From Octopus bimaculoides (Eukaryota), in the NCBI RefSeq assembly GCF_001194135.2, contig NC_068989.1, positions 73,034,904 through 73,069,162 on the forward strand: 34,259 nt of DNA, written 5' to 3'. Of the stretch, positions 11,259 through 34,259 are shown piece after piece; the first letter of the stretch is position 1, and each line of letters begins with the position of its first letter. Both the position numbers and the translations under genes were made by a program. The notes under the pieces were generated by a model that saw only the letters and a list, made by a program, of their open reading frames with translations, was not told the origin of the DNA and did no database searches.

Positions 11259-11621
11259 CAAAAAGTCACAAAAGCAAAGTTTGAAGGAGATAGTACTCAC
11301 TAACACTTACTGACCAGAAACAAATAAATAAATAAAATTTGTTACACAGTGTAATGAACCAATCCAGCACTGAGAGACTGACACTCGCTGTTTTGTTTCT
11401 GTCTGTCTGAGACCTGAGGAGAGATAGACTCTTCAAGGGTCTAAAGATGTTCAAGTCATGTCGTTTGTGACGACGGCACCGCTGCACCTCGATCGGAGTA
11501 ACCGTGAAAAAATTTATATATATATACATACACACATATATTTATGTACATACATATATATATGTACATATATATGTGTACACACACACATACACACACA
11601 CACACACAAATATATAAATAA

Positions 11622-11670
<49 letters not shown>

Positions 11671-11674
<4 letters not shown>

Positions 11675-12511
11675 CTGACGTACCCGGTAATTTCCGGGAA
11701 AGCGGGGCTTATCCCTTGGGTCCGTTCTCATAATTGCTTCGCTAATCCAGTGACAACAATACAAAGTATGTAGCCCTTAAAACGGTTTTTGTGCATTTAT
11801 TGAGAATACCAGAGTGCCTTCACAGGATCTTGTTTTTAGGAATTCCCAATAAGTTATGAATACCCAAATTGTGAAGTCAGTTATGTAATTACAGGAAATT
11901 AGTCACCCGATAGTAAGAATTCAAATAAAGTAGCCCCGAAAAAGGCTTTAATGGGTTCCCAGAGCATATAAAACTTAGGAGGAAATACTAATAAGGTATG
12001 TATACTAAAATCGTGAAGCATGTTACGTAATAACAGGCTAATCATATATGAGATAATAACAGTTCAAAGTAAATAACTCTGAAAAGAGCTTTTGTGTGTT
12101 CCTTAGACAACATTACCCTCAGCGGCGCTAGTGTTGATATAAATCACTAACTGAAATAAGTGGATCTATTGTTTAGGAAAATACTATTTATTTTTTTAAG
12201 GGTAGTACTGGATAAATTGCGAAAATAACTCTAACAATTCAAATACTAAGAAATAACCATACTCAATTTGATTTATACCAAATGATTTAGGAAAATGGCT
12301 ATTAAAATGAACTGTATTAGGTATATTTATTAGGATCCCTTCCAAGTGCCGTATTATCGATTTTTCAACAATATGAGTATGCCATAAGATTTCCAGACAT
12401 GATTTCTACTCACGTGTCAAGTTTCATCAAAATCGAAAAAACAATGTAGGAGGAGTTAGCTAACAACTTCACAAACACACACACAGACGAATTTCCCACA
12501 TATGTAGTAGA
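11671..12511 (-). mobile_element. Complete non-autonomous Helitron (841 bp)
   Basis: On the minus strand: 5' TC start, 3' CTAA (CTRR) end, hairpin CCCGG-AAATTA-CCGGG (11683-11698) ending 12 nt from the 3' end, insertion between A and T with no TSD, short (TG) tract near the 5' end. Confidence 0.85.
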
Positions 12512-12534
12512 TATATCTATATATATACACACTT

Positions 12535-12622
<88 letters not shown>

Positions 12623-12654
12623 ACATATATATATATATATATATGTACATATAT

Positions 12655-12963
12655 GTGCTTTAGTGGTTAGGGCATTCGGCTCGTAAACGTAAGGTCGTGA
12701 GCTCAATTCCCGGTGACGCGTTGTGTCCTTGAGCAAGACTCTTTATTTCACGTTGCTCTAGTCCACTCAGCTGGCAAAAATGAGTAGTACCTGTATCTGA
12801 AAGGGCCAGCCTTGTCACACTCTGTGTTACGCTGAATCTTCTTAAGAACTACGTTAAGGGTACACGTGTCTGTGCTCATCCACATTTACGTTAATTCCAC
12901 GAGCAACTTGTTCCGTTGATCGCATCAGCTGGGACCCTCGTTGTCGTAACCGACGACGTGCTC
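12655..12963 (+). mobile_element. Family-B2 tRNA-headed CORE-like SINE
   Basis: tagtggttagggcattcgg head; tgtgtccttgagcaagact CORE-like block; 3' block ttaagggtacacgtgtc shared with B1. Confidence 0.88.
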
Positions 12964-13064
12964 CTATCTATATGTACATGTGTGTGTGGGGGGGTCTGTC
13001 TGTGTGTGTGTGTGGGGGGTCTGTCTGTGTGTGTGTGTGTGTGTGTGTGTAAGCAAATATAAAT

Positions 13065-13283
13065 ATCAGCAAAGTCATGCAGCGAATAGGCGGAAGAAAA
13101 CTAATCACTTTCCTTGAGGAAAATTACTTTCTGACTGACACCCAACATAATTTCCGACCAGGAAGAAGCTGCCTGACTCAGCACTTGCAACACTACGACT
13201 GGATGCTGAAACAGCTGCTCAACCACTGAAATGTGGATGGGATGTATCTCGACTTTGCAAAAGCGTTCGATAAAATGGAATGA
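13065..13283 (+). mobile_element. CR1/L2-type LINE reverse-transcriptase fragment (dead)
   Basis: Own translation: ISKVMQRIGGRKLITFLEENYFLTDTQHNFRPGRSCLTQHLQHYDWMLKQLLNH*NVDGMYLDFAKAFDKME*, matching the QHGFR.GRSC and YLDF.KAFD RT motifs; in-frame stop at 13227. Confidence 0.88.
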
Positions 13284-13329
13284 TATATCACCAGCATTCA
13301 AAGGATTACAATAATTCTTTCTGCTAAAA

Positions 13330-13455
13330 GCTAGTCGATTACATTGACCCCACTGCTCAACAGTACATATTTTATCAATCTCGGACTCAGAACGTGAAGA
13401 CAGACGAAATGCCGCAAAGCATTTTGTCGGGCGTGCTAACGATTCTGCCAGTCTT
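13330..13455 (-). mobile_element. Internally deleted family-A SINE
   Basis: gtcgattacattgacccc, ctcagaacg, gcgtgctaacgattctgccag. Confidence 0.8.
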
Positions 13456-13891
13456 TCAGAACATTATAATAATAAGAAACAAATGACATTAAAAGAACTA
13501 ATAATCTAAAGATATTTGTATTTCCTCTGGTTTGTGTCTCATTCCACAGCAATAGTCAAAACACCAGTGCATATGTTGGCTCCCTTTTTGTGTTTTACAA
13601 AAACTCACAGCTGTGTTCTTCCTGTACGTAAGCGAGTATCTCTTGATCATATAATTGTTTTTGGCATTTTTCATTGGTACACTGCAGAGTCAGTAACATG
13701 TGAAACAGATGCGAGAGCATGTTTGAACTTCGTCTACCTGTAGTCTTGTATTTATTTATGTTTACAGAGAGAGAGAGAGAGAGGTGGGGGGAGGTTAGAG
13801 AGAAAGAGAGAGAGGGTATGGAATGTTCAGAATTATGTAGTCATACTATATATATGTATTTATACATCAATCGTTCTTGCCTCTCTTTCTG

Positions 13892-13923
<32 letters not shown>

Positions 13924-13997
13924 CACACACACACATCGTTTTTTTTTTTTTTTTACGGTAGAATTGTACATAGATAAAGCTATGAATAATTCTTATT

Positions 13998-14207
13998 AAT
14001 TTTGGCCCAAGGTCAAAAATTTTGATGGGGAGAGGACAATCCGATTACAGTGATCCCTCAGCTAAAATGGCACTTAATTTATCGACCCCGAAAGTGGGAT
14101 TAAAGGCAAAGCCGACCTCGGTGACATTTGAGTTCAGAACGCAAAGCATTGCTGCTTTGCATTTTGTCCGATGTACTAGCGATCCTTCCAGCTCGATGCC
14201 TTAGATA
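13998..14207 (-). mobile_element. Diverged family-A SINE (A-double-prime tail)
   Basis: aattttggcccaaggtc tail; aatttatcgaccccgaaag; aaggcaaagccgacctcgg; ttccagctcg head. Confidence 0.8.
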
Positions 14208-14383
14208 AGGCTATAAATAATAACATGTGGAATATTGGGAGGCCTTCGACATTTTACATCCAAGGGTTTTTATAATCCCAAAATTCCATTGGCTGTTATT
14301 TATAGCTTTATCTACATCGAGTTCCACCGTTAAGAAAAAAACAAACGATTTCATATCTAAGTTTCTAAATTCTCATATAGATG

Positions 14384-14438
<55 letters not shown>

Positions 14439-14624
14439 TTATATACATGTGTGTTATGTATGGATAGACATACATACATACATACTCTCTCTCTCTCTTT
14501 CTTCCTCTCTTCCTTATCGATAGTGTTGTCATTGATTTTCGAGGAAACGTAAACTCAGTGTTCCAATTGTAACCATTCCTTGTTTTTCGTTGTACCAAGA
14601 AAAATGTTCTGGTGGGATTTGAGG

Positions 14625-14765
14625 GAAGGTGCGTAGCCTTAGGGTTACGACGCACGGTTCATAACCGCAAAATTGTGGGTTCAACACCCGGACCGGGTGG
14701 CACATTATGTCCTTGAGCAAGGTACTTCATTTCATGTTGCTCCAGTCTACTCATCAGTAAATATA
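14625..14765 (+). mobile_element. 5' half of a family-B2 CORE-like SINE
   Basis: gggttcaacaccc B-box-like; ttatgtccttgagcaaggtacttcatttcatgttgctccagtctactca. Confidence 0.75.
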
Positions 14766-14825
14766 TTCTAATCGGTTATTGGTGCATCTCTGTCTGTCTC
14801 TTCCTGTCTCTTCTCCCCCACCCCG

Positions 14826-14861
<36 letters not shown>

Positions 14862-14944
14862 ATCAGCTGACATCCTGTATGTTGTTCCTCTTAAGCGGAG
14901 GATCAGAGAGACTAAAAAGTGCCTTTGTCTGAGCTCGCATACAC

Positions 14945-15148
14945 ATTCTTTTCTACTATAGGCACAAGGCCCGAAACTTTTGGAGAGGGGGTTGCCAGTC
15001 GATTAGATCGACCCCAGTACACAAATGGTAGTTAATTTATTGACCCCGGAAAGATGAAAGGCAAAGTTGACCTCGGCGGAATTTGAACTCAGAACTTTAA
15101 GATAGTCGAAATACCCGCTGAGCGTTTCGCCCGGCGTGCTAACGTTTC
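14945..15148 (-). mobile_element. Family-A SINE whose head is cut at the target site by an A-prime insertion
   Basis: Tail ttctactataggcacaaggcc; body; the head ends at gcgtgctaacgtttc (15134-15148) instead of continuing tgccagctc. Confidence 0.9.
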
Positions 15149-15309
15149 TTATTTCTTTATTGCCCACAAGGGGCTAAACATAGAGGGGACAAACAAGGAC
15201 AGACAAAGGGATTAAGTTGATTACATTGACCCCAGTGCGTAACTGGTACTTAATTTATCGTCCCCGAAAGGATGAAAGGTAAAGTCGACCTCGGCGAAAT
15301 TTGAAGATA
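15149..15309 (-). mobile_element. Family A-prime SINE (SINE-A body + Tx1/L1-like 3' tail), 5' part missing
   Basis: Sense 3' end ...cccctctatgtttagccccttgtgggcaataaagaaataa joined to gaaacgttagcacgc; body gtcgactttacctttcatcctttcgggg. Confidence 0.88.
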
Positions 15310-16016
15310 GTGCTCCAGCATGACNNNNNNNNNNNNNNNNNNNNNNNNNNNNNNNNNNNNNNNNNNNNNNNNNNNNNNNNNNNNNNNNNNNNNNNNNNNN
15401 NNNNNNNNNNNNNNNNNNNNNNNNNNNNNNNNNNNNNNNNNNNNNNNNNNNNNNNNNNNNNNNNNNNNNNNNNNNNNNNNNNNNNNNNNNNNNNNNNNNN
15501 NNNNNNNNNNNNNNNNNNNNNNNNNNNNNNNNNNNNNNNNNNNNNNNNNNNNNNNNNNNNNNNNNNNNNNNNNNNNNNNNNNNNNNNNNNNNNNNNNNNN
15601 NNNNNNNNNNNNNNNNNNNNNNNNNNNNNNNNNNNNNNNNNNNNNNNNNNNNNNNNNNNNNNNNNNNNNNNNNNNNNNNNNNNNNNNNNNNNNNNNNNNN
15701 NNNNNNNNNNNNNNNNNNNNNNNNNNNNNNNNNNNNNNNNNNNNNNNNNNNNNNNNNNNNNNNNNNNNNNNNNNNNNNNNNNNNNNNNNNNNNNNNNNNN
15801 NNNNNNNNNNNNNNNNNNNNNNNNNNNNNNNNNNNNNNNNNNNNNNNNNNNNNNNNNNNNNNNNNNNNNNNNNNNNNNNNNNNNNNNNNNNNNNNNNNNN
15901 NNNNNNNNNNNNNNNNNNNNNNNNNNNNNNNNNNNNNNNNNNNNNNNNNNNNNNNNNNNNNNNNNNNNNNNNNNNNNNNNNNNNNNNNNNNNNNNNNNNN
16001 NNNNNNATATATATAT

Positions 16017-16179
16017 GACGGGCTTCTATCAGTTTCCATCCATCAAATCCACTCACAAGGCTTTGGTCGACCCAAGGCTATAGTAGAAAACACATGCCCA
16101 AGGTGCCACGCGGGGGTGGGACTGAACCCGGAAGCATGTGGTTGAGAAGCAAGCTTCTTATCACACAGCCACGCCAGCG
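16017..16179 (-). mobile_element. Family-C tRNA-headed CORE-like SINE, 5' part
   Basis: gacgggcttctatcagtttcc...tagtagaaaacacatgcccaaggtgccac...gactgaacccgg...cacacagccacgcc; the reverse complement has A/B-box-like and GGCACCTTGGGCA CORE-like motifs. Confidence 0.85.
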
Positions 16180-18925: not shown

Positions 18926-18941
18926 AACTCACAGTCTATGT

Positions 18942-19266
18942 TGGCACTCCGTCGCTTACGACGTCGAGGATTCCAATTGATCCGATCAACGGAACAGCCT
19001 GCTCGTGAAATTAACGTGCAAGTGGCAGAGCACTCCACAGACACGTGTACCCATAACGTAGTTCTCGGGGATATTCAGCGTGACACAGTGTGACAAGGCT
19101 GACCCTTTGAATTACAGGCACAACAGAAACAGGAAGTAAGAGTGAGAGAAAGCTGTGGTGAAAGAGTACAGCAGGGTTCACCACCATCCCTTGCCGGAGC
19201 CTCGTGGAGCTTTAGTTGTTTTCGCTCAATAAACACTCACAACGCCCGGTCTGGGAATCGAAACCG
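18942..19266 (-). mobile_element. Family-B1 SINE (head hidden in gap 19267-19557)
   Basis: Near-exact reverse complement of 29810-30138. Confidence 0.92.
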
Positions 19267-19557
19267 NNNNNNNNNNNNNNNNNNNNNNNNNNNNNNNNNN
19301 NNNNNNNNNNNNNNNNNNNNNNNNNNNNNNNNNNNNNNNNNNNNNNNNNNNNNNNNNNNNNNNNNNNNNNNNNNNNNNNNNNNNNNNNNNNNNNNNNNNN
19401 NNNNNNNNNNNNNNNNNNNNNNNNNNNNNNNNNNNNNNNNNNNNNNNNNNNNNNNNNNNNNNNNNNNNNNNNNNNNNNNNNNNNNNNNNNNNNNNNNNNN
19501 NNNNNNNNNNNNNNNNNNNNNNNNNNNNNNNNNNNNNNNNNNNNNNNNNNNNNNNNN

Positions 19558-19760
19558 GGGGCTAAACATAGAGGGGACAAACAAGGACAGACAAAGGGAT
19601 TACATCGAACCCCAGTGCGTAACTGGTACTTAATTTATCGACCCTGAAAGGATGAAAGGTAAAGTTGACCTCAGCGGAATTTGAACTCAGAACGTAACGA
19701 CAGACGAAATACCGCTAAGTATTTCGTCCAGCGTGCTAACGATTCCGCCAGCTCGTCGCC
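19558..19760 (-). mobile_element. Family A-prime SINE with intact SINE-A head and Tx1/L1-like tail (3' junction hidden by gap)
   Basis: 45 nt of tail (19558-19602) identical to 15170-15214; head gcgtgctaacgattccgccagctcgtcgcc. Confidence 0.9.
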
Positions 19761-21456
19761 TTCGTATCACCACTCATAATAACAGTGTCTTTAATTTTCT
19801 TGTATTTTTTTTTTTTTTTAATAATAATAGAGATATTGGATTTTACGGACAAAGCTGTTAAAAACAAAGTCAGATGGAAGTGAATTATTATAAAGAAAAT
19901 TAGGAAAAAAATGGGTATTAACTCAGATCTATACATCAGGGAATAAATAATGAAATATATTTTGTCGTAATAATGATAGATGGTGCTTTTGATCTTTGTC
20001 TTAAACCGGTTTCTAACGATAATAAAATAGCTATTTTAAACCATTCTCAATTACAAATAATGTTACTATGGTGATAAGAAAATATAATTGAAAAAAAAAA
20101 ATTAAGGAAAAAAAAGTAAGTGTACACGTTACAAAACAACTGGATTTAACTCTTCTATTGAGAGTAATGAAAGAAAGAAAAGGATAGGAAAATGAGCATT
20201 AACTCTGTTTTGCGCAGTTGTGTGTGTGTGTGCGCGCGCGCGTGTGTGTGTAACTTTTCCATCTTGGATTCTGTTTATAACGTGTATAATTTAATTTAAT
20301 GCTTATATTAGAAAGTCTTAACCGTTCTACTTTATCATAGGCAAATAACATTATTACGGTGTTGATCTTTTCCAAATTATAGCAATATTGTGAACTTCAA
20401 ACGTGGAAGCTAAATTAAATAATGAATACGTAAATATTCTTATATGTATGTATGTATGTATGTATGCATATATATAACGACACTTTAGAGACTGAATACT
20501 ATAAATTCATTTATTGATTCTTGAAGGAATTGAACACACATATTGTATCTTACGTTGGACATATGGTATTGTTCCTGTGATTTTCCACCCTTATGTATCC
20601 ATTTTTACTATAAGATATATATATATATATATATATGTATAAAAGAAGTTTGAAAATGCCAATATATAAAAAATGAATTTTAATTTATAATTTTGTCAGA
20701 GATATTTAACATGTTTCGGTTCTTGAAAAAACGAACCTTATCAAAAATACATATTTAAAAAAATGTGTAATTAAAAGAAAAGTTCATAATTGTTCCTTAC
20801 TGGTGTCAACATAGTCCACGTTTTTTGTATGGGTACATTACGGCTGTCTAGTGCGTTGACTTGAATCGTTGGTTGTAGTAGTAGTAGTGACCCTGTTGGT
20901 AATGGTAAATATATATATATGCATATGTATATATATTTATATATGAGAGAGAAATGGATAGGTGGAAAGATTGGTTGATAGATAGGTAGATTGATAGAAA
21001 ATTGATGCATAAGCATAAAAAAATACATCCACGTTAATCAAGAGCTCGATTTGTAACACATCATTTAACTCCAATATGTTATTACAATGCAGTAAATATA
21101 AATAGAACCAAGTTGCATATATACGCATGATTGACTTGAAGTGAAATTTTAGAGCAACATTAAAAATATAAAGCAGAAAAGCAGATTTCACATAAAGACT
21201 ATTTGTGCTCGACAGTTGTTTCACTAGCAATAAACATCATTAATTCCGTGATTCCGTAATACTCCCGATGAGTTAATAATTCCACAACGCTCTCAATGAT
21301 TTTGGTAAACATTGCTTTTAAATCAATTTACTGTGATTTAATTAATTGCATATCATAATTAAATAATTATGAAACTAGGTTTATGAAATTATGTTTATTG
21401 CTAATGAAACAGCTGTTCAGCACAATTAAATTGAAACTTACGCTTCTCAGTTTTGT

Positions 21457-21625: not shown

Positions 21626-21799
21626 TAAATTGCTGTTTGTACCGGTACTGAAATGTACCAGTAAGTTCCAATTGATTTGCGTTTTCAGAATATAACTTTG
21701 TTGTTGTATCGTGGGAGGGTCATTTTGTCAAAAAAAAAAAAAAAAAAAAAAAAAATCACCCGCCGAGTTCCTATTTAATTTCTTCTTCATCGTCGTCGA

Positions 21800-21895
21800 T
21801 AAATTAAGTACCAGTGAAACACTGGGGTCAATGTAATCGATTAGTCCCCTCACCCAAAATTTCAGGCCTTGTGCCTATAGTAGAAAGGATCATTG
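21800..21895 (+). mobile_element. 3' half of a family-A SINE with (ATT)n tail
   Basis: gtcgataaattaagtaccagtgaaacactggggtcaatgtaatcg...ggccttgtgcctatagtagaaagg. Confidence 0.85.
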
Positions 21896-22357: not shown

Positions 22358-22425
<68 letters not shown>

Positions 22426-22525
22426 ATAGGCACCAGTTGGGTACTAAGATTAATGTAATCGCCTAGAACCCTCCCAAAATTTTCAGGCATTGAGCCTATA
22501 TTAGAAAGGATTATTATTATTATTA

Positions 22526-23974: not shown

Positions 23975-24288
23975 GAAGGCACGTGGCTAAGTGATTAGGG
24001 GTATTCGGTTCGCGATCATGAGTTCGATTCCCAGCGGTACATTGTGTCCTTGAACAAGACACTTTACTTCACGTTGCACAAGTCCTTTCAGCTGGCAAAA
24101 ATGAGTTGTACCTGTAATTCAAAATGTCGCATTTTGTGTTACACTGAATCTCCCTGAGAACTATGTTAAAGGTACGCGAATCTGAGGAGTGCTCAGCCAC
24201 TTGCACGTTAGCTTCACGAGTAGGCTGTTCTGTTGATCTGATGGACTGGAGTCTTTGTCATCGTAACCGCGTAACTGACGGAGTGCCA
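23975..24288 (+). mobile_element. Family-B2 CORE-like SINE
   Basis: Colinear with 12655-12963: gagttcgattccc, ttgtgtccttgaacaagacacttt, cagctggcaaaaatgag, tgacggagtgcca. Confidence 0.88.
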
Positions 24289-29050: not shown

Positions 29051-29142
29051 AGTGTATTAGATTGCAGTTGATTTTCTTCTCTTGTTGCAAGTATACAACA
29101 CATATACGGTTTAATAAGGGTTTTAATATATTTTGGATTCAA

Positions 29143-29353
29143 GTCGGCGATCTGGCAGAAACGGTAACACACCGAACGAACTGCTTAGCGGTATTTCGTG
29201 TCTTTACGTTCTGAGTTCAAATTCCGCCGTGGTCAGCTTTGCCTTTCATCCTTTCGGAGTCGATAAATTAAGTACCAGTTGTGTACTGCGGTCGATCTAA
29301 TCAACTGCTCCTCTTCCCTCAAAATTTCGGACGTTGTTCCTAGAGTAGAAAAG
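29143..29353 (+). mobile_element. Full-length family-A SINE with an 18-bp TSD (1 mismatch)
   Basis: aatatattttggattcaa (29125-29142) and aatatattttggactcaa (29354-29371) flank a complete SINE-A. Confidence 0.9.
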
Positions 29354-29761
29354 AATATATTTTGGACTCAAAATCGAGAGGCGTATTATACTTGATCTTT
29401 TTTACTATTCATCTAGCTTCTTTTTCTTTTCTTTTTTTTCAGTGAGGCGAGGGGCTTCAGTCAGTGAATTTCTTCCTTCAATCAATGGCCCTATTTTATA
29501 AATATACTAAATGTTTCTTTGGTAAATATGAAGAAAACTTTTAGTTACAGTTTCTTTCAACTCCGGTTTCCATTGCTGCTCTCTTATTTGGGTTAGCGCA
29601 TTTAATTTTCCGTTTGTTTTTTAAAGAGACATTCTGCTTTCTCTCTCTCTTTCTCTCTCTCCCCTCTCTTTTCTCCCTCTCTTTTCTCTCTCTCTTTCCT
29701 CGTTCGTTCTATCAATGGCTATTGCCCATTCAATTTTCTATCCATAATGCATCATAAGTGT

Positions 29762-30146
29762 GGAGGCGCAATGGCCCAATGGTTAGGGCAGCGGACTCGC
29801 GGTCATAGGATCGCGGTTTCGATTCCTAGACCGGGCGCTGTGAGTGTTTATTGAGCGAAAACACCTAAAGCTCTACGAGGCTCCGCCAGAGGATGGTGGC
29901 GAACCCTGCTGTACTCTTTCACCACAGCTTTCTCTCACTCTTACTTCCTGTTTCTGTTGTGTCTGTAATTCAAAGGGTCAGCCTTGTCACACTGTGTCAC
30001 GCTGAATATCCCCGAGAACTACATTAAGGGTACACGTGTCTGTGGAGTGCTCAGCCACTTGCCCGTTAATTTCACGAGCAGGCTGTTCCGTTGATCGGAT
30101 CAACTGGAACCCTCGATGTCGTAAGCGACGGAGTGCCAACAACAAC
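29762..30146 (+). mobile_element. Full-length family-B1 tRNA-derived SINE with (AAC)n tail
   Basis: tRNA-like head ggaggcgcaatggcccaatggttagggcagcggactcgcggtc...gtttcgattcc (Arg-like, tentative); 3' end gacggagtgccaacaacaac. May correspond to the described octopus OR-type SINEs (unverified). Confidence 0.92.
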
Positions 30147-32924: not shown

Positions 32925-33659
32925 CAGTAATATCTTACTTTACGAGGGTCCGCTTTGTGAGACCCCGGGTTTACGAGTTTTATTTTTCAAGTACAAGATC
33001 CAAATTTTGAACGAAGTGCAAATGTTTCTATTACCATAACAAATGCTTTTGCGTGTTATCGAGAAATTTATGGAGAGCGGAAAAAAGCTTCTTCGAAGCA
33101 AACAACTCTAGACTTGTTTCTTAAAACGAAATCTACTTGTCCGTCTACGAGTGCTTGTGAATCGGCGACGCGTCTGCAAATGATGGTTTGCGTACATTTA
33201 GTGCGAGTGAAAGTGATTCAGAAAGTGATAATAATATTTATTATTATAAATGATCTTTCCGTTCTTTTTACTTTATCTAAAATATATATTTACATTCTAC
33301 TGTTGCTTTATTGCCATTTATTTACGAGTATTATAAATTTTATAGGTAAAATATTTTTCTGGGAACGAATTACGATTTATAACATTGCTACTATAGGAAA
33401 TTATTTTTCCGTTTTACGAGTTTTCACTTTAGGCACAAGGCCCGAAATTTTGGTGAGGGGCTCAGTCGATTAGATCGACCCCAGTACGCAACTGGTGCTT
33501 AATTTATCGACCCCGAAAGGATAAAAGGCAAAGTCGACATCGGCGGAATTTGCACTCAGAACATAAAGACAGACGAAATACCGTTAAGCATTTCGCCCGG
33601 CGTGCTAACGTTTCTGCCAGCTCACCGCCTTAATTAACTCGTATATCGAGGCATTACTG
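32925..33659 (+). mobile_element. Internally deleted Tigger/pogo-like DNA transposon with imperfect 22-bp TIRs and TA TSD
   Basis: TA-cagtaatatcttactttacgag ... ctcgtatatcgaggcattactg-TA (16/22 match); residual transposase C-terminus QDPNFERSANVSITITNAFACYREIYGERKKASSKQTTLDLFLK (32994-33125). Confidence 0.85.
33420..33629 (-). mobile_element. Full-length family-A SINE nested in the Tigger-like element, empty target site
   Basis: aggcacaaggcccgaaatttt tail to gcgtgctaacgtttctgccagctcaccgcc head. Confidence 0.92.
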
Positions 33660-33933: not shown

Positions 33934-34259
33934 GGAGGCGCAATGGCCCAGTGGTTAGGGCAGCGGACTCACGGTCATTGGATCGCGGTTTCGATTCCCA
34001 GACCGGGCGTTGTGAGTGTTTATTGAGCGAAAACACCTAAAGCTGTACGAGGCTCCGGCAGGGGATGGTGGCGAACCCTGCTGTACTCTTCCACCACAAC
34101 GTTTTCTCACTCTTACTTCCTGTTTCTGTTGTGCCTGTAATTCAAAGGGTCAGCTGTGTCACGCTGAATCTCCCCGAGAACTACGTTAAGGGTACACGTG
34201 TGTGTGGAGTGCTCAGCCACTTGCACGTTAATTTCACGAGCAGGCTGTTCCGTTGATCG
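33934..34259 (+). mobile_element. Family-B1 SINE, truncated by window end
   Basis: Colinear with 29762-30138. Confidence 0.92.

What the first reader, a model, noticed from the sequence alone, without database searches (positions are those of the whole stretch)
15134..15214. Partner SINE (A-prime) carries the LINE's 3' tail and abuts the identical target position
Seen: the sense 3' end of A-prime (ttgtcccctctatgtttagccccttgtgggcaataaagaaataa|gaaacgttagcacgc) aligns with the element's 3' end at 2266-2310 (ttgttccctctatattcgccccgtagtgggtaataaaaagatta|gaatcgttagcacgc) at 35 of 46 columns by my manual alignment. Both keep a GCCC...GGG(C/T) stem-loop directly before AATAAA, and both join the same base of the SINE-A head. 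A second A-prime copy (19558-19760) has 45 nt of identical tail and its own intact SINE-A head. Established: many SINEs borrow the 3' tail or stem-loop of their partner LINE for retrotransposition. Inference: A-prime is a chimera of SINE-A and the tail of the LINE that attacks SINE-A. It would be mobilised site-specifically into its own parent family and carry a new target site in every copy, a self-propagating three-member system.
Basis: partly seen in the sequence, partly recalled or inferred. Interest (0 to 1): 0.85.

Follow-up and report, generated by a model that had tools for sequence, protein, structure and literature searches.

The report
SINE variant sharing a site-specific retroelement's tail
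In this octopus scaffold, a variant of a common short repeat (SINE) carries the 3' tail of a LINE-derived element, and both sit at exactly the same base in the head of the parent SINE, which suggests a site-specific LINE/SINE pair that uses another repeat as its landing pad; only two junctions can be seen here.

Summary
The A-prime tail aligns to the 3' end of the 1077-2310 element at 35 of 47 columns (z about 10 against shuffles). MAFFT extends this to 47 of 66 aligned bases with one 17-nt indel. Both tails are followed at once by GAAWCGTTAGCACGC, the same base of the SINE-A head.

The 1234-bp element is a clean insertion into a SINE-A copy. It has a perfect 15-bp target-site duplication, and joining its flanks restores a continuous SINE-A. 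It carries a decayed ORF1 with a CCHC knuckle, whose relatives are Octopus bimaculoides and O. sinensis proteins. It has no reverse transcriptase, so it is a LINE derivative, not the autonomous LINE.

A-prime is a real subfamily: two copies share the breakpoint, 45 identical tail bases and diagnostic body changes.

Limits:
- Only three tails lie in the window and only two 3' junctions are visible. The 5' end of copy 1 and the 3' end of copy 2 fall in N gaps.
- The proposed stem-loop is three invariant C-G pairs with no covariation.
- No octopus DNA could be reached for a genome-wide census.

The closest precedent is Tx1-Mar plus SINEU-3 inserting into Mariner-N4_AMi. Verdict: a plausible new variant of a known kind, of moderate interest.

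The parts
15149..15324 (-). A-prime copy 1, visible part. The body starts from about the B-box-like GTTCAAATT region. The LINE-like tail is 15149-15214 and ends ...GGGCAATAAAGAAATAA. The 5' end is lost in the 15325-16006 gap.
15134..15148 (-). GAAACGTTAGCACGC: the first bases of the downstream SINE-A and the target 15-mer, one mismatch from the duplicated target of the 1234-bp element.
14944..15148 (-). SINE-A copy lacking its first 15-17 nt (AAGGCGGTGAGCTGGCA), with its own different tail ...TTTCGGGCCTTGTGCCTATAGTAGAAAAGAAT. It abuts the A-prime tail head-to-tail.
19558..19762 (-). A-prime copy 2. It has a full head with an exact GAATCGTTAGCACGC at 19731-19745. Its 45 visible tail bases are identical to copy 1. 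The 3' end and junction are hidden in the 19267-19557 gap.
1077..2310 (+). 1234-bp non-LTR retroelement derivative: about 175 nt of 5' UTR, a decayed ORF1 (stops and frameshifts) and a 3' UTR. It has no RT or EN. The 3' tail homologous to A-prime is about 2236-2310.
1392..1586 (+). ORF1 fragment with a CCHC zinc knuckle. Its relatives, at 50-65% identity, are Octopus bimaculoides and O. sinensis proteins.
1062..1076 (+). 5' copy of the 15-bp target-site duplication GAATCGTTAGCACGC.
2311..2325 (+). 3' copy of the 15-bp target-site duplication GAATCGTTAGCACGC.
1045..1076 (+). Head fragment of the SINE-A copy that was split by the 1234-bp insertion.
2311..2469 (+). The rest of the split SINE-A copy. 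Its own tail is missing; it abuts a minus-strand RT fragment of another LINE.

Best explanation
A-prime is a subfamily of the abundant octopus SINE-A. Its last 45 or so bases were replaced by a tail of about 65 nt homologous to the 3' end of an ORF1-bearing non-LTR retroelement family.

That family integrates by target-primed reverse transcription at one defined site in the SINE-A head. The first nick is on the antisense strand, just 5' of GAAWCGTTAGCACGC, about 15-17 nt into the SINE. The second nick is 15 bp downstream on the sense strand, which gives a 15-bp duplication.

Because A-prime RNA presents the same 3' tail, the same machinery copies it into the same site. That machinery is an autonomous LINE not present in this window. 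The result is a head-to-tail array of A-prime followed by a SINE-A that lacks its first 15-17 nt.

Shown: the insertion and duplication for the 1234-bp element; the tail homology; the identical 3' junction; that A-prime is a subfamily.

Inferred: that one enzyme made both junctions; that it is sequence-specific rather than merely biased; that A-prime copies generally land there.
For: - A perfect 15/15 duplication flanks 1077-2310. Joining the flanks restores one continuous SINE-A.
- The tail homology is far above shuffles and extends to 47 of 66 bases.
- The A-prime 3' junction lies at the same base, with a chance of about 1e-4 from 8 sites in about 60,000 positions.
- Only three such tails exist in the window, and both visible junctions are at this site.
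- An ordinary SINE-A (29141-29354) sits at a non-SINE site with its own 17-bp duplication, so the head site is not a general SINE-A habit.
- The two A-prime copies share the breakpoint, 45 identical tail bases and body changes.
- ORF1 relatives exist in two Octopus species.
- Precedent: Tx1-Mar LINEs and SINEU-3 share one site in Mariner-N4_AMi with a 16-bp duplication and tandem insertions (PMC4494074).
Against: - Only one A-prime junction is visible. Its 5' side and any duplication are in a gap.
- A-prime copy 2 is preceded by ordinary flank, not by a 30-nt SINE-A head stub. If it used this site, its 5' end must have fused with the target head by homology.
- No RT or endonuclease gene with this tail was found, in the window or outside it.
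- Tail identity is only about 71-75%.
- The hairpin has no covariation and weak z-scores.
- The scaffold is a gappy short-read assembly in which repeats may be mis-joined.
Confidence: 0.62

Rival explanations
1. One founding event, then hitch-hiking. A single A-prime insertion into a SINE-A head created a dimer (A-prime plus a SINE-A lacking 15 nt). That dimer then spread as a unit using the SINE-A tail, or by segmental duplication. Under this reading the junction here is inherited and says little about A-prime's own target choice.
For: The downstream SINE-A keeps a complete SINE-A-type tail that could drive retroposition of the whole dimer. No T-run terminator lies between the two units. Kojima had to exclude this same hitch-hiking possibility for SINEU-3.
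Against: The founding event would still be at the exact site used by the 1234-bp element. A-prime copy 2 shows that the A-prime unit exists with its own head and an independent flank. With one dimer in view, this rival cannot be separated from the main explanation.
Confidence: 0.15
2. Template switching or recombination, not targeting. Reverse transcriptase copying a SINE-A RNA stopped at a fixed point in the head, for example at a processed or modified 5' end, and jumped to the 3' end of an A-prime RNA. Alternatively, unequal recombination joined the two units.
For: Template jumps and 5' additions are documented for Tx1-mobilised SINEs. Tandem SINE arrays formed by recombination are reported in bivalves (PMC11481361).
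Against: This cannot explain the 1234-bp element, which has the 30-nt upstream head stub and a perfect 15-bp duplication. It would need an unrelated process to hit the same base, with a chance of about 1e-4.
Confidence: 0.08
3. The tail similarity is real, but neither element is the other's partner. Both the 1234-bp element and A-prime are non-autonomous passengers that independently captured the tail of an unseen LINE, or the ORF1 element took its tail from the SINE. The shared site reflects that unseen LINE only.
For: The 1234-bp copy has no RT or EN. The tails differ at about 25-29% of positions and by a 17-nt indel.
Against: This refines the main explanation rather than contradicting it. 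The targeting and the shared machinery remain.
Confidence: 0.1
4. Assembly artefact: a short-read contig switched paths inside repeats, so the A-prime/SINE-A join does not exist at this locus.
For: There are 11 N gaps in 34 kb, one of them 176 nt from the junction.
Against: The junction sequence must exist in reads somewhere for an assembler to produce it. It lies inside a contiguous stretch, 10594-15324. The 1234-bp element and both of its duplications lie in one contig.
Confidence: 0.05

Closest known systems
Tx1-Mar LINEs with SINEU-3 (and SINEU-1/2) targeting the DNA transposon Mariner-N4_AMi in crocodilians (Kojima 2015, PMC4494074)
   Same: A target-specific non-LTR element and a SINE share one insertion site inside another abundant repeat. 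The duplication has a fixed length of about 15-16 bp (AGGTTCCCATCAGCAT there, GAATCGTTAGCACGC here). Insertions can be head-to-tail. The shared target is the argument for trans-mobilisation.
   Different: There the target is a DNA transposon and the SINE heads come from U1/U2 snRNA. Here the target is the head of a SINE, and the partner SINE is derived from that same SINE, so each new copy brings a fresh target. There the RT phylogeny places the LINE in Tx1. Here no ORF2 is available. The crocodilian case rests on hundreds of copies; this one rests on two junctions.
Tx1L inserting into Tx1D (piggyBac-type) in Xenopus, and other Tx1-clade target-specific families: Keno/U2, Mutsu/5S, Kibi (TC)n, Koshi (TTC)n
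   Same: APE-type non-LTR elements that choose one sequence in a multicopy, dispensable target. ORF1 of the RRM plus CCHC type is reported for L1/Tx1 elements of non-mammalian animals.
   Different: No SINE target has been reported for these families in the papers I could read. Clade membership is untested here. The single CCHC ORF1 is not diagnostic, since Jockey-superfamily elements show every ORF1 type.
Classical SINE/LINE tail sharing (Ohshima and Okada; Kajikawa and Okada 2002)
   Same: The SINE 3' tail is homologous to the 3' end of a LINE-type element and is presumably what the reverse transcriptase recognises.
   Different: Classical pairs insert more or less at random. Here the shared tail comes with a shared exact target.
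Tandem SINE arrays in bivalves, of the form TSD-(SINE-TSD)n (PMC11481361)
   Same: Head-to-tail SINE units in a mollusc genome.
   Different: Those arrays are same-family units separated by the same duplication and are ascribed to unequal recombination. Here the two units have different tails, and the join is at a site also used by a LINE-derived element.

Membership tests
SINE with a LINE-derived 3' tail (SINE2-type retroposon) | Short, non-coding, dispersed in multiple copies | tested here: met
   There are two A-prime copies of about 250 nt, 88% identical, at separate loci. About 17 SINE-A-like copies lie in 30 kb.
SINE with a LINE-derived 3' tail (SINE2-type retroposon) | Head derived from a small RNA gene, with an internal Pol III promoter (A and B boxes) | tested here: inconclusive
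   Box-like motifs are visible by eye: TGGCAGAAWCG and GAGTTCAAATTCC. However, ARAGORN finds no tRNA, and Rfam gives no tRNA match at the gathering score or at E<=1 on a good copy.
SINE with a LINE-derived 3' tail (SINE2-type retroposon) | 3' tail homologous to the 3' end of a LINE | tested here: met
   35 of 47 columns, z about 10, and 47 of 66 bases when extended. The comparison is with an RT-less LINE derivative, not with an autonomous LINE.
SINE with a LINE-derived 3' tail (SINE2-type retroposon) | Flanked by target-site duplications | not testable with these tools
   The 5' end of copy 1 and the 3' end of copy 2 lie in N gaps.
Target-specific non-LTR retrotransposon (Tx1-like) | Encodes a reverse transcriptase and an endonuclease | tested here: not met
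   The 1077-2310 copy has only a decayed ORF1 with zf-CCHC; no frame holds an RT or EN. The nearby RT fragment at about 2470-3400 is on the other strand and belongs to another element. The family's autonomous member was not found.
Target-specific non-LTR retrotransposon (Tx1-like) | Independent copies at the same target sequence, in the same orientation | tested here: inconclusive
   Two of the two visible junctions of tail-bearing elements are at the same base. This is too few for a rate.
Target-specific non-LTR retrotransposon (Tx1-like) | Fixed-length target-site duplication made of target sequence | tested here: met
   A 15-bp perfect duplication of SINE-A head sequence; the empty site is restored by joining the flanks. 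This is one case only.
Target-specific non-LTR retrotransposon (Tx1-like) | RT phylogeny inside the Tx1/L1 clade | not testable with these tools
   No ORF2 sequence is available. The ORF1 type (CCHC, relatives with an upstream domain) is compatible with Tx1/L1 but not diagnostic.
SINEU (Kojima 2015) | Head derived from U1 or U2 snRNA | tested here: not met
   The A-prime head is the SINE-A head, and Rfam finds no snRNA match. The system may work like SINEU/Tx1-Mar, but A-prime is not a member.

The most novel reading that the evidence does not exclude
A-prime is a self-targeting SINE. By taking the tail of a LINE whose endonuclease recognises the A-box region of SINE-A, it inserts into heads of its own family. 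Each insertion cuts the downstream copy off from the first half of its promoter and supplies a new intact head with a new target. Arrays could then grow, and one SINE subfamily would displace its parent: a parasite of a parasite that also makes its own landing pads.
Probability: 0.35. Interest if true: 0.7.

Novelty: new variant of a known kind. Interest (0 to 1): 0.55.

Why it matters
Target-specific LINEs are the natural models for programmable, safe-harbour RNA-templated insertion, and each new specificity is a new enzyme-target pair to study. A LINE/SINE pair whose target lies inside the head of an abundant SINE, with a partner SINE built from that same SINE, would show three things. It would show how a non-autonomous element can inherit both the recognition tail and the landing site. 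It would give a mechanism for head-to-tail SINE arrays that needs no recombination. And it would help explain how SINEs, a major fraction of octopus genomes, are structured and turned over. It would also give a simple 15-nt target and a tail of about 65 nt for biochemical tests. If the census fails, the finding reduces to an ordinary SINE subfamily with a LINE-like tail.

Tried and rejected
1. Finding the autonomous LINE or other copies by protein search. The putative C-terminal piece and the ORF1 gave no word-index hits. The third and last search, with the minus-strand RT fragment, returned only distant non-cephalopod RTs.

2. The exhaustive HMMER search with the 65-aa ORF1 fragment did find single-stretch relatives, named as O. 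bimaculoides and O. sinensis proteins. These ids did not come from the search for homologous proteins. The contig look-up tool says such proteins are not accepted, so I did not hand them in and did not seek the loci by another route.

3. Six exact look-ups of window ORFs found nothing on record. They comprised the ORF spanning the junction, the RT fragment, two ORFs of the 1234-bp element and two ORFs of the young SINE-C family.

4. Pattern scans. The tail 19-mer in metagenomes gave four bacterial chance hits, L001-L004, which are irrelevant. The SINE-A core found nothing in the prokaryote genomes or in viral contigs.

5. A full-text search for the sequences themselves found no paper. The Albertin 2015 genome paper is not held.

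6. The stem-loop. Single-sequence folds are only weakly better than shuffles, and the two tails fold differently. The consensus is three invariant C-G pairs. I rejected it as evidence.

7. tRNA origin of the head. ARAGORN and Rfam are negative, so it stays an inference from motifs.

8. I considered that the 3' part of 1077-2310 is an ORF2 C-terminus. There is no Pfam or homologue support, and weak resemblance to the ends of the octopus ORF1-type proteins suggests it is ORF1 or UTR.

Full report
**What the window is.** The window is 34,259 bases at 37% G+C with 11 runs of N. It is dense in microsatellites and short interspersed repeats. No tRNA gene and no Rfam family reaches threshold. The only protein-like sequences are retroelement remnants. 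Relatives of one of them are named by their sources as Octopus bimaculoides (UniRef A0A0L8G4Z0, A0A0L8GVD2) and Octopus sinensis (XP_036368115.1) proteins. The scaffold is therefore from an octopus.

**The repeat called SINE-A.** A sensitive self-BLAST finds about 17 copies or fragments of one SINE of about 220 nt. Good copies lie at 6137-6357 (+), 29141-29354 (+) and 33422-33640 (-).
- They begin AAGGCGGTGAGCTGGCAGAAWCGTTAGCACGCCGGGCG.
- They contain GAGTTCAAATTCCGCCGAGGTCGAC and end ...TTTCGGGCCTTGTGCCTATAGTAGAAAGGA.
- The copy at 29141-29354 sits in non-repeat DNA between a 17-bp duplication, ATATATTTTGGAYTCAA. So ordinary SINE-A does not target other SINEs.
- A tRNA origin of the head is only my reading of box-like motifs. 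ARAGORN and Rfam do not support it.

GAATCGTTAGCACGC occurs perfectly at 1062-1076 and again at 2311-2325.
- The sequence before the first copy is the start of a SINE-A head. The sequence after the second copy continues that SINE-A.
- Joining 1040-1076 to 2326-2475 gives one uninterrupted SINE-A in a multiple alignment.
- So 1077-2310 (1234 bp) is a simple insertion with a 15-bp target-site duplication. The base before each copy differs (G versus A), so the duplication is exactly 15 bp.
- Inside is a decayed ORF1 with stops and frameshifts and one CCHC knuckle (Pfam zf-CCHC, E = 9e-5).
- It is 50-65% identical over about 60-108 residues to octopus proteins of 97-386 aa that have the same knuckle.
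- No frame holds a reverse transcriptase or an endonuclease. It is therefore a LINE-derived, RT-less copy, not an autonomous LINE.
- The RT fragment just downstream (about 2470-3400) is on the opposite strand, is only 41% identical to its best relatives (a lancelet protein and unnamed assembly proteins), and belongs to a different element.

**A-prime.** Two copies exist, at 15149-15324 (-) and 19558-19762 (-).
- Their heads and bodies are 83-88% identical to SINE-A.
- After ...GATGTAATC(AACT)TAATCCCT they diverge from SINE-A into TTTGTCTGTCCTTGTTTGTCCCCTCTATGTTTAGCCCCTTGTGGGCAATAAAGAAATAA.
- The two copies share the breakpoint, 45 identical tail bases up to the gap, and body substitutions absent from SINE-A (CTTTACC, CAGTTACGCAC). 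A-prime is thus a real subfamily.

**The tail comparison.**
- The local score is 38, against 16.2 +/- 2.2 for shuffles with a maximum of 26.
- MAFFT extends the homology to a shared TAAT about 85 nt from the end of the 1234-bp element: 47 of 66 aligned bases and one 17-nt indel.
- Searches with degenerate tail motifs find only these three tails in the window.

**The junctions.** The 1234-bp element ends ...AAAAAGATTA|GAATCGTTAGCACGC. A-prime copy 1 ends ...AAAGAAATAA|GAAACGTTAGCACGC. The latter is followed by a complete SINE-A body and SINE-A tail, so that SINE-A lacks only its first 15-17 nt.
- There are eight matches to the 15-mer in about 60,000 strand positions. By my estimate, an unrelated junction would land there with probability of about 1e-4.
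- The other heads are unoccupied: 6154, 13431, 19731, 28874 and 33600, plus the more diverged head of the 29141 copy.

**What cannot be seen.**
- The 5' end of A-prime copy 1 is in the 682-N gap (15325-16006). The far side of that gap is a different SINE and (AT)n.
- The 3' end of copy 2 is in the 291-N gap (19267-19557). The far side is a third SINE family whose own head is also in the gap.
- Copy 2 is preceded by ordinary flank, not by a 30-nt head stub. If it used the same site, its cDNA must have joined the target head by homology, which would leave a single fused head. That is plausible for target-primed insertion, but it is an inference.

**The stem-loop.** GCCC...GGG(C/T) is present in both tails.
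- The best fold of the 1234-bp element's tail pairs GGG with a different upstream CCC.
- The z-scores are -2.2 and -1.4.
- The consensus of the two tails is three invariant C-G pairs at -3.1 kcal/mol with no covariation.
- The only difference is G-C to G-U on one side. This is conserved sequence, not demonstrated structure.

**Mechanism.** The simplest account is target-primed reverse transcription by an endonuclease that nicks the antisense strand just 5' of GAAWCG and the sense strand 15 nt downstream.
- RNAs ending in the shared tail would be used as templates.
- The cut site (5'-CGATTC|TGCC on the primed strand) does not resemble the T-rich L1 consensus, as I recall it. That points to real sequence specificity rather than AT bias.
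- Read-through A-prime transcripts would carry downstream target sequence, which might help priming as in other site-specific LINEs. This too is from my own knowledge and is untested.
- The site overlaps the A-box-like motif. An insertion therefore separates the downstream copy from the first half of that motif, while A-prime brings a complete head.

**What is known.** The closest published system is in crocodilians (PMC4494074).
- Tx1-Mar LINEs and SINEU-3 both insert at one place in the DNA transposon Mariner-N4_AMi, with a 16-bp duplication.
- 90% of the 347 nearly full-length SINEU-3 copies examined are flanked by that transposon, and tandem insertions sandwich a duplication.
- Other Tx1 families there target LTR elements, Harbinger transposons and microsatellites.
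- ORF1 proteins with an RRM and a CCHC knuckle are described for L1/Tx1 elements of non-mammalian animals, but the type is not diagnostic (PMC5203782).
- In octopus, the open literature I could search reports full-length RTE and Dong LINEs (PMC9115989) and the OR1/OR2 CORE-SINEs. It reports no SINE-targeting LINE and none of these sequences. Repbase entries could not be checked.

**Verdict.** If a census confirms it, this is a new variant of a known kind: a target-specific LINE/SINE pair whose target is a SINE head and whose SINE derives from that same SINE. Confidence in the main explanation is 0.62. Interest is 0.55.

Noticed in passing
window 6137-6357, 21760-21890, 22421-22512: Several SINE-A copies sit inside or directly beside long (ATT)n microsatellites; the copy at 6137 has (ATT)n on both sides. 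Either the SINE-A tail seeds (ATT)n, or its own LINE partner prefers such repeats. A Dong-type LINE, known for TAA-repeat targets, is reported as full-length in O. bimaculoides (PMC9115989).
   Followed up: partly
window 29760-30141 (+), 18939-19266 (-), 33986-34177, 24135-24269: A third SINE-like family of about 370 nt, starting GTGGAGGCGCAATGGCCCAATGGTTAGGGC. Two of its copies are 95% identical, so it is much younger than SINE-A.
   Followed up: partly
window 16040-16170 (-): Another SINE type, with a segment (CACCTTGGGCATGTGTTTTCTACTATAGCC) that resembles the CORE domain reported for the octopus OR1/OR2 SINEs. This resemblance is from memory and was not tested.
   Followed up: no
window about 2470-3400 (-): A decayed reverse-transcriptase fragment (Pfam RVT_1, E = 3e-10) of an unrelated LINE. 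It abuts the 3'-truncated end of the split SINE-A. Its best relatives are only 41-42% identical: a Branchiostoma belcheri protein and an unnamed protein from a public read assembly.
   Followed up: partly
window 893-1037 (+): An old, diverged SINE-A-like copy lies about 10-20 nt upstream of the head that received the 1234-bp insertion, so SINE-A copies cluster head-to-tail here even without the site-specific element.
   Followed up: no
protein P0134 (UniRef A0A0L8GVD2, O. bimaculoides), not in the window: An 809-aa gene model starts with the C-terminal part of this ORF1 family, including the CCHC knuckle, and continues into a GRF zinc finger and an SNF2 helicase domain. It is either a chimeric annotation or an exonised retroelement fragment.
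   Followed up: no
window 9623-9819 (-): A diverged SINE-A copy begins CAGAATCGTTAG, within two bases of the target position. The sequence upstream does not look like the shared tail. It is either a 5' truncation by chance or an old, eroded insertion at the same site.
   Followed up: no
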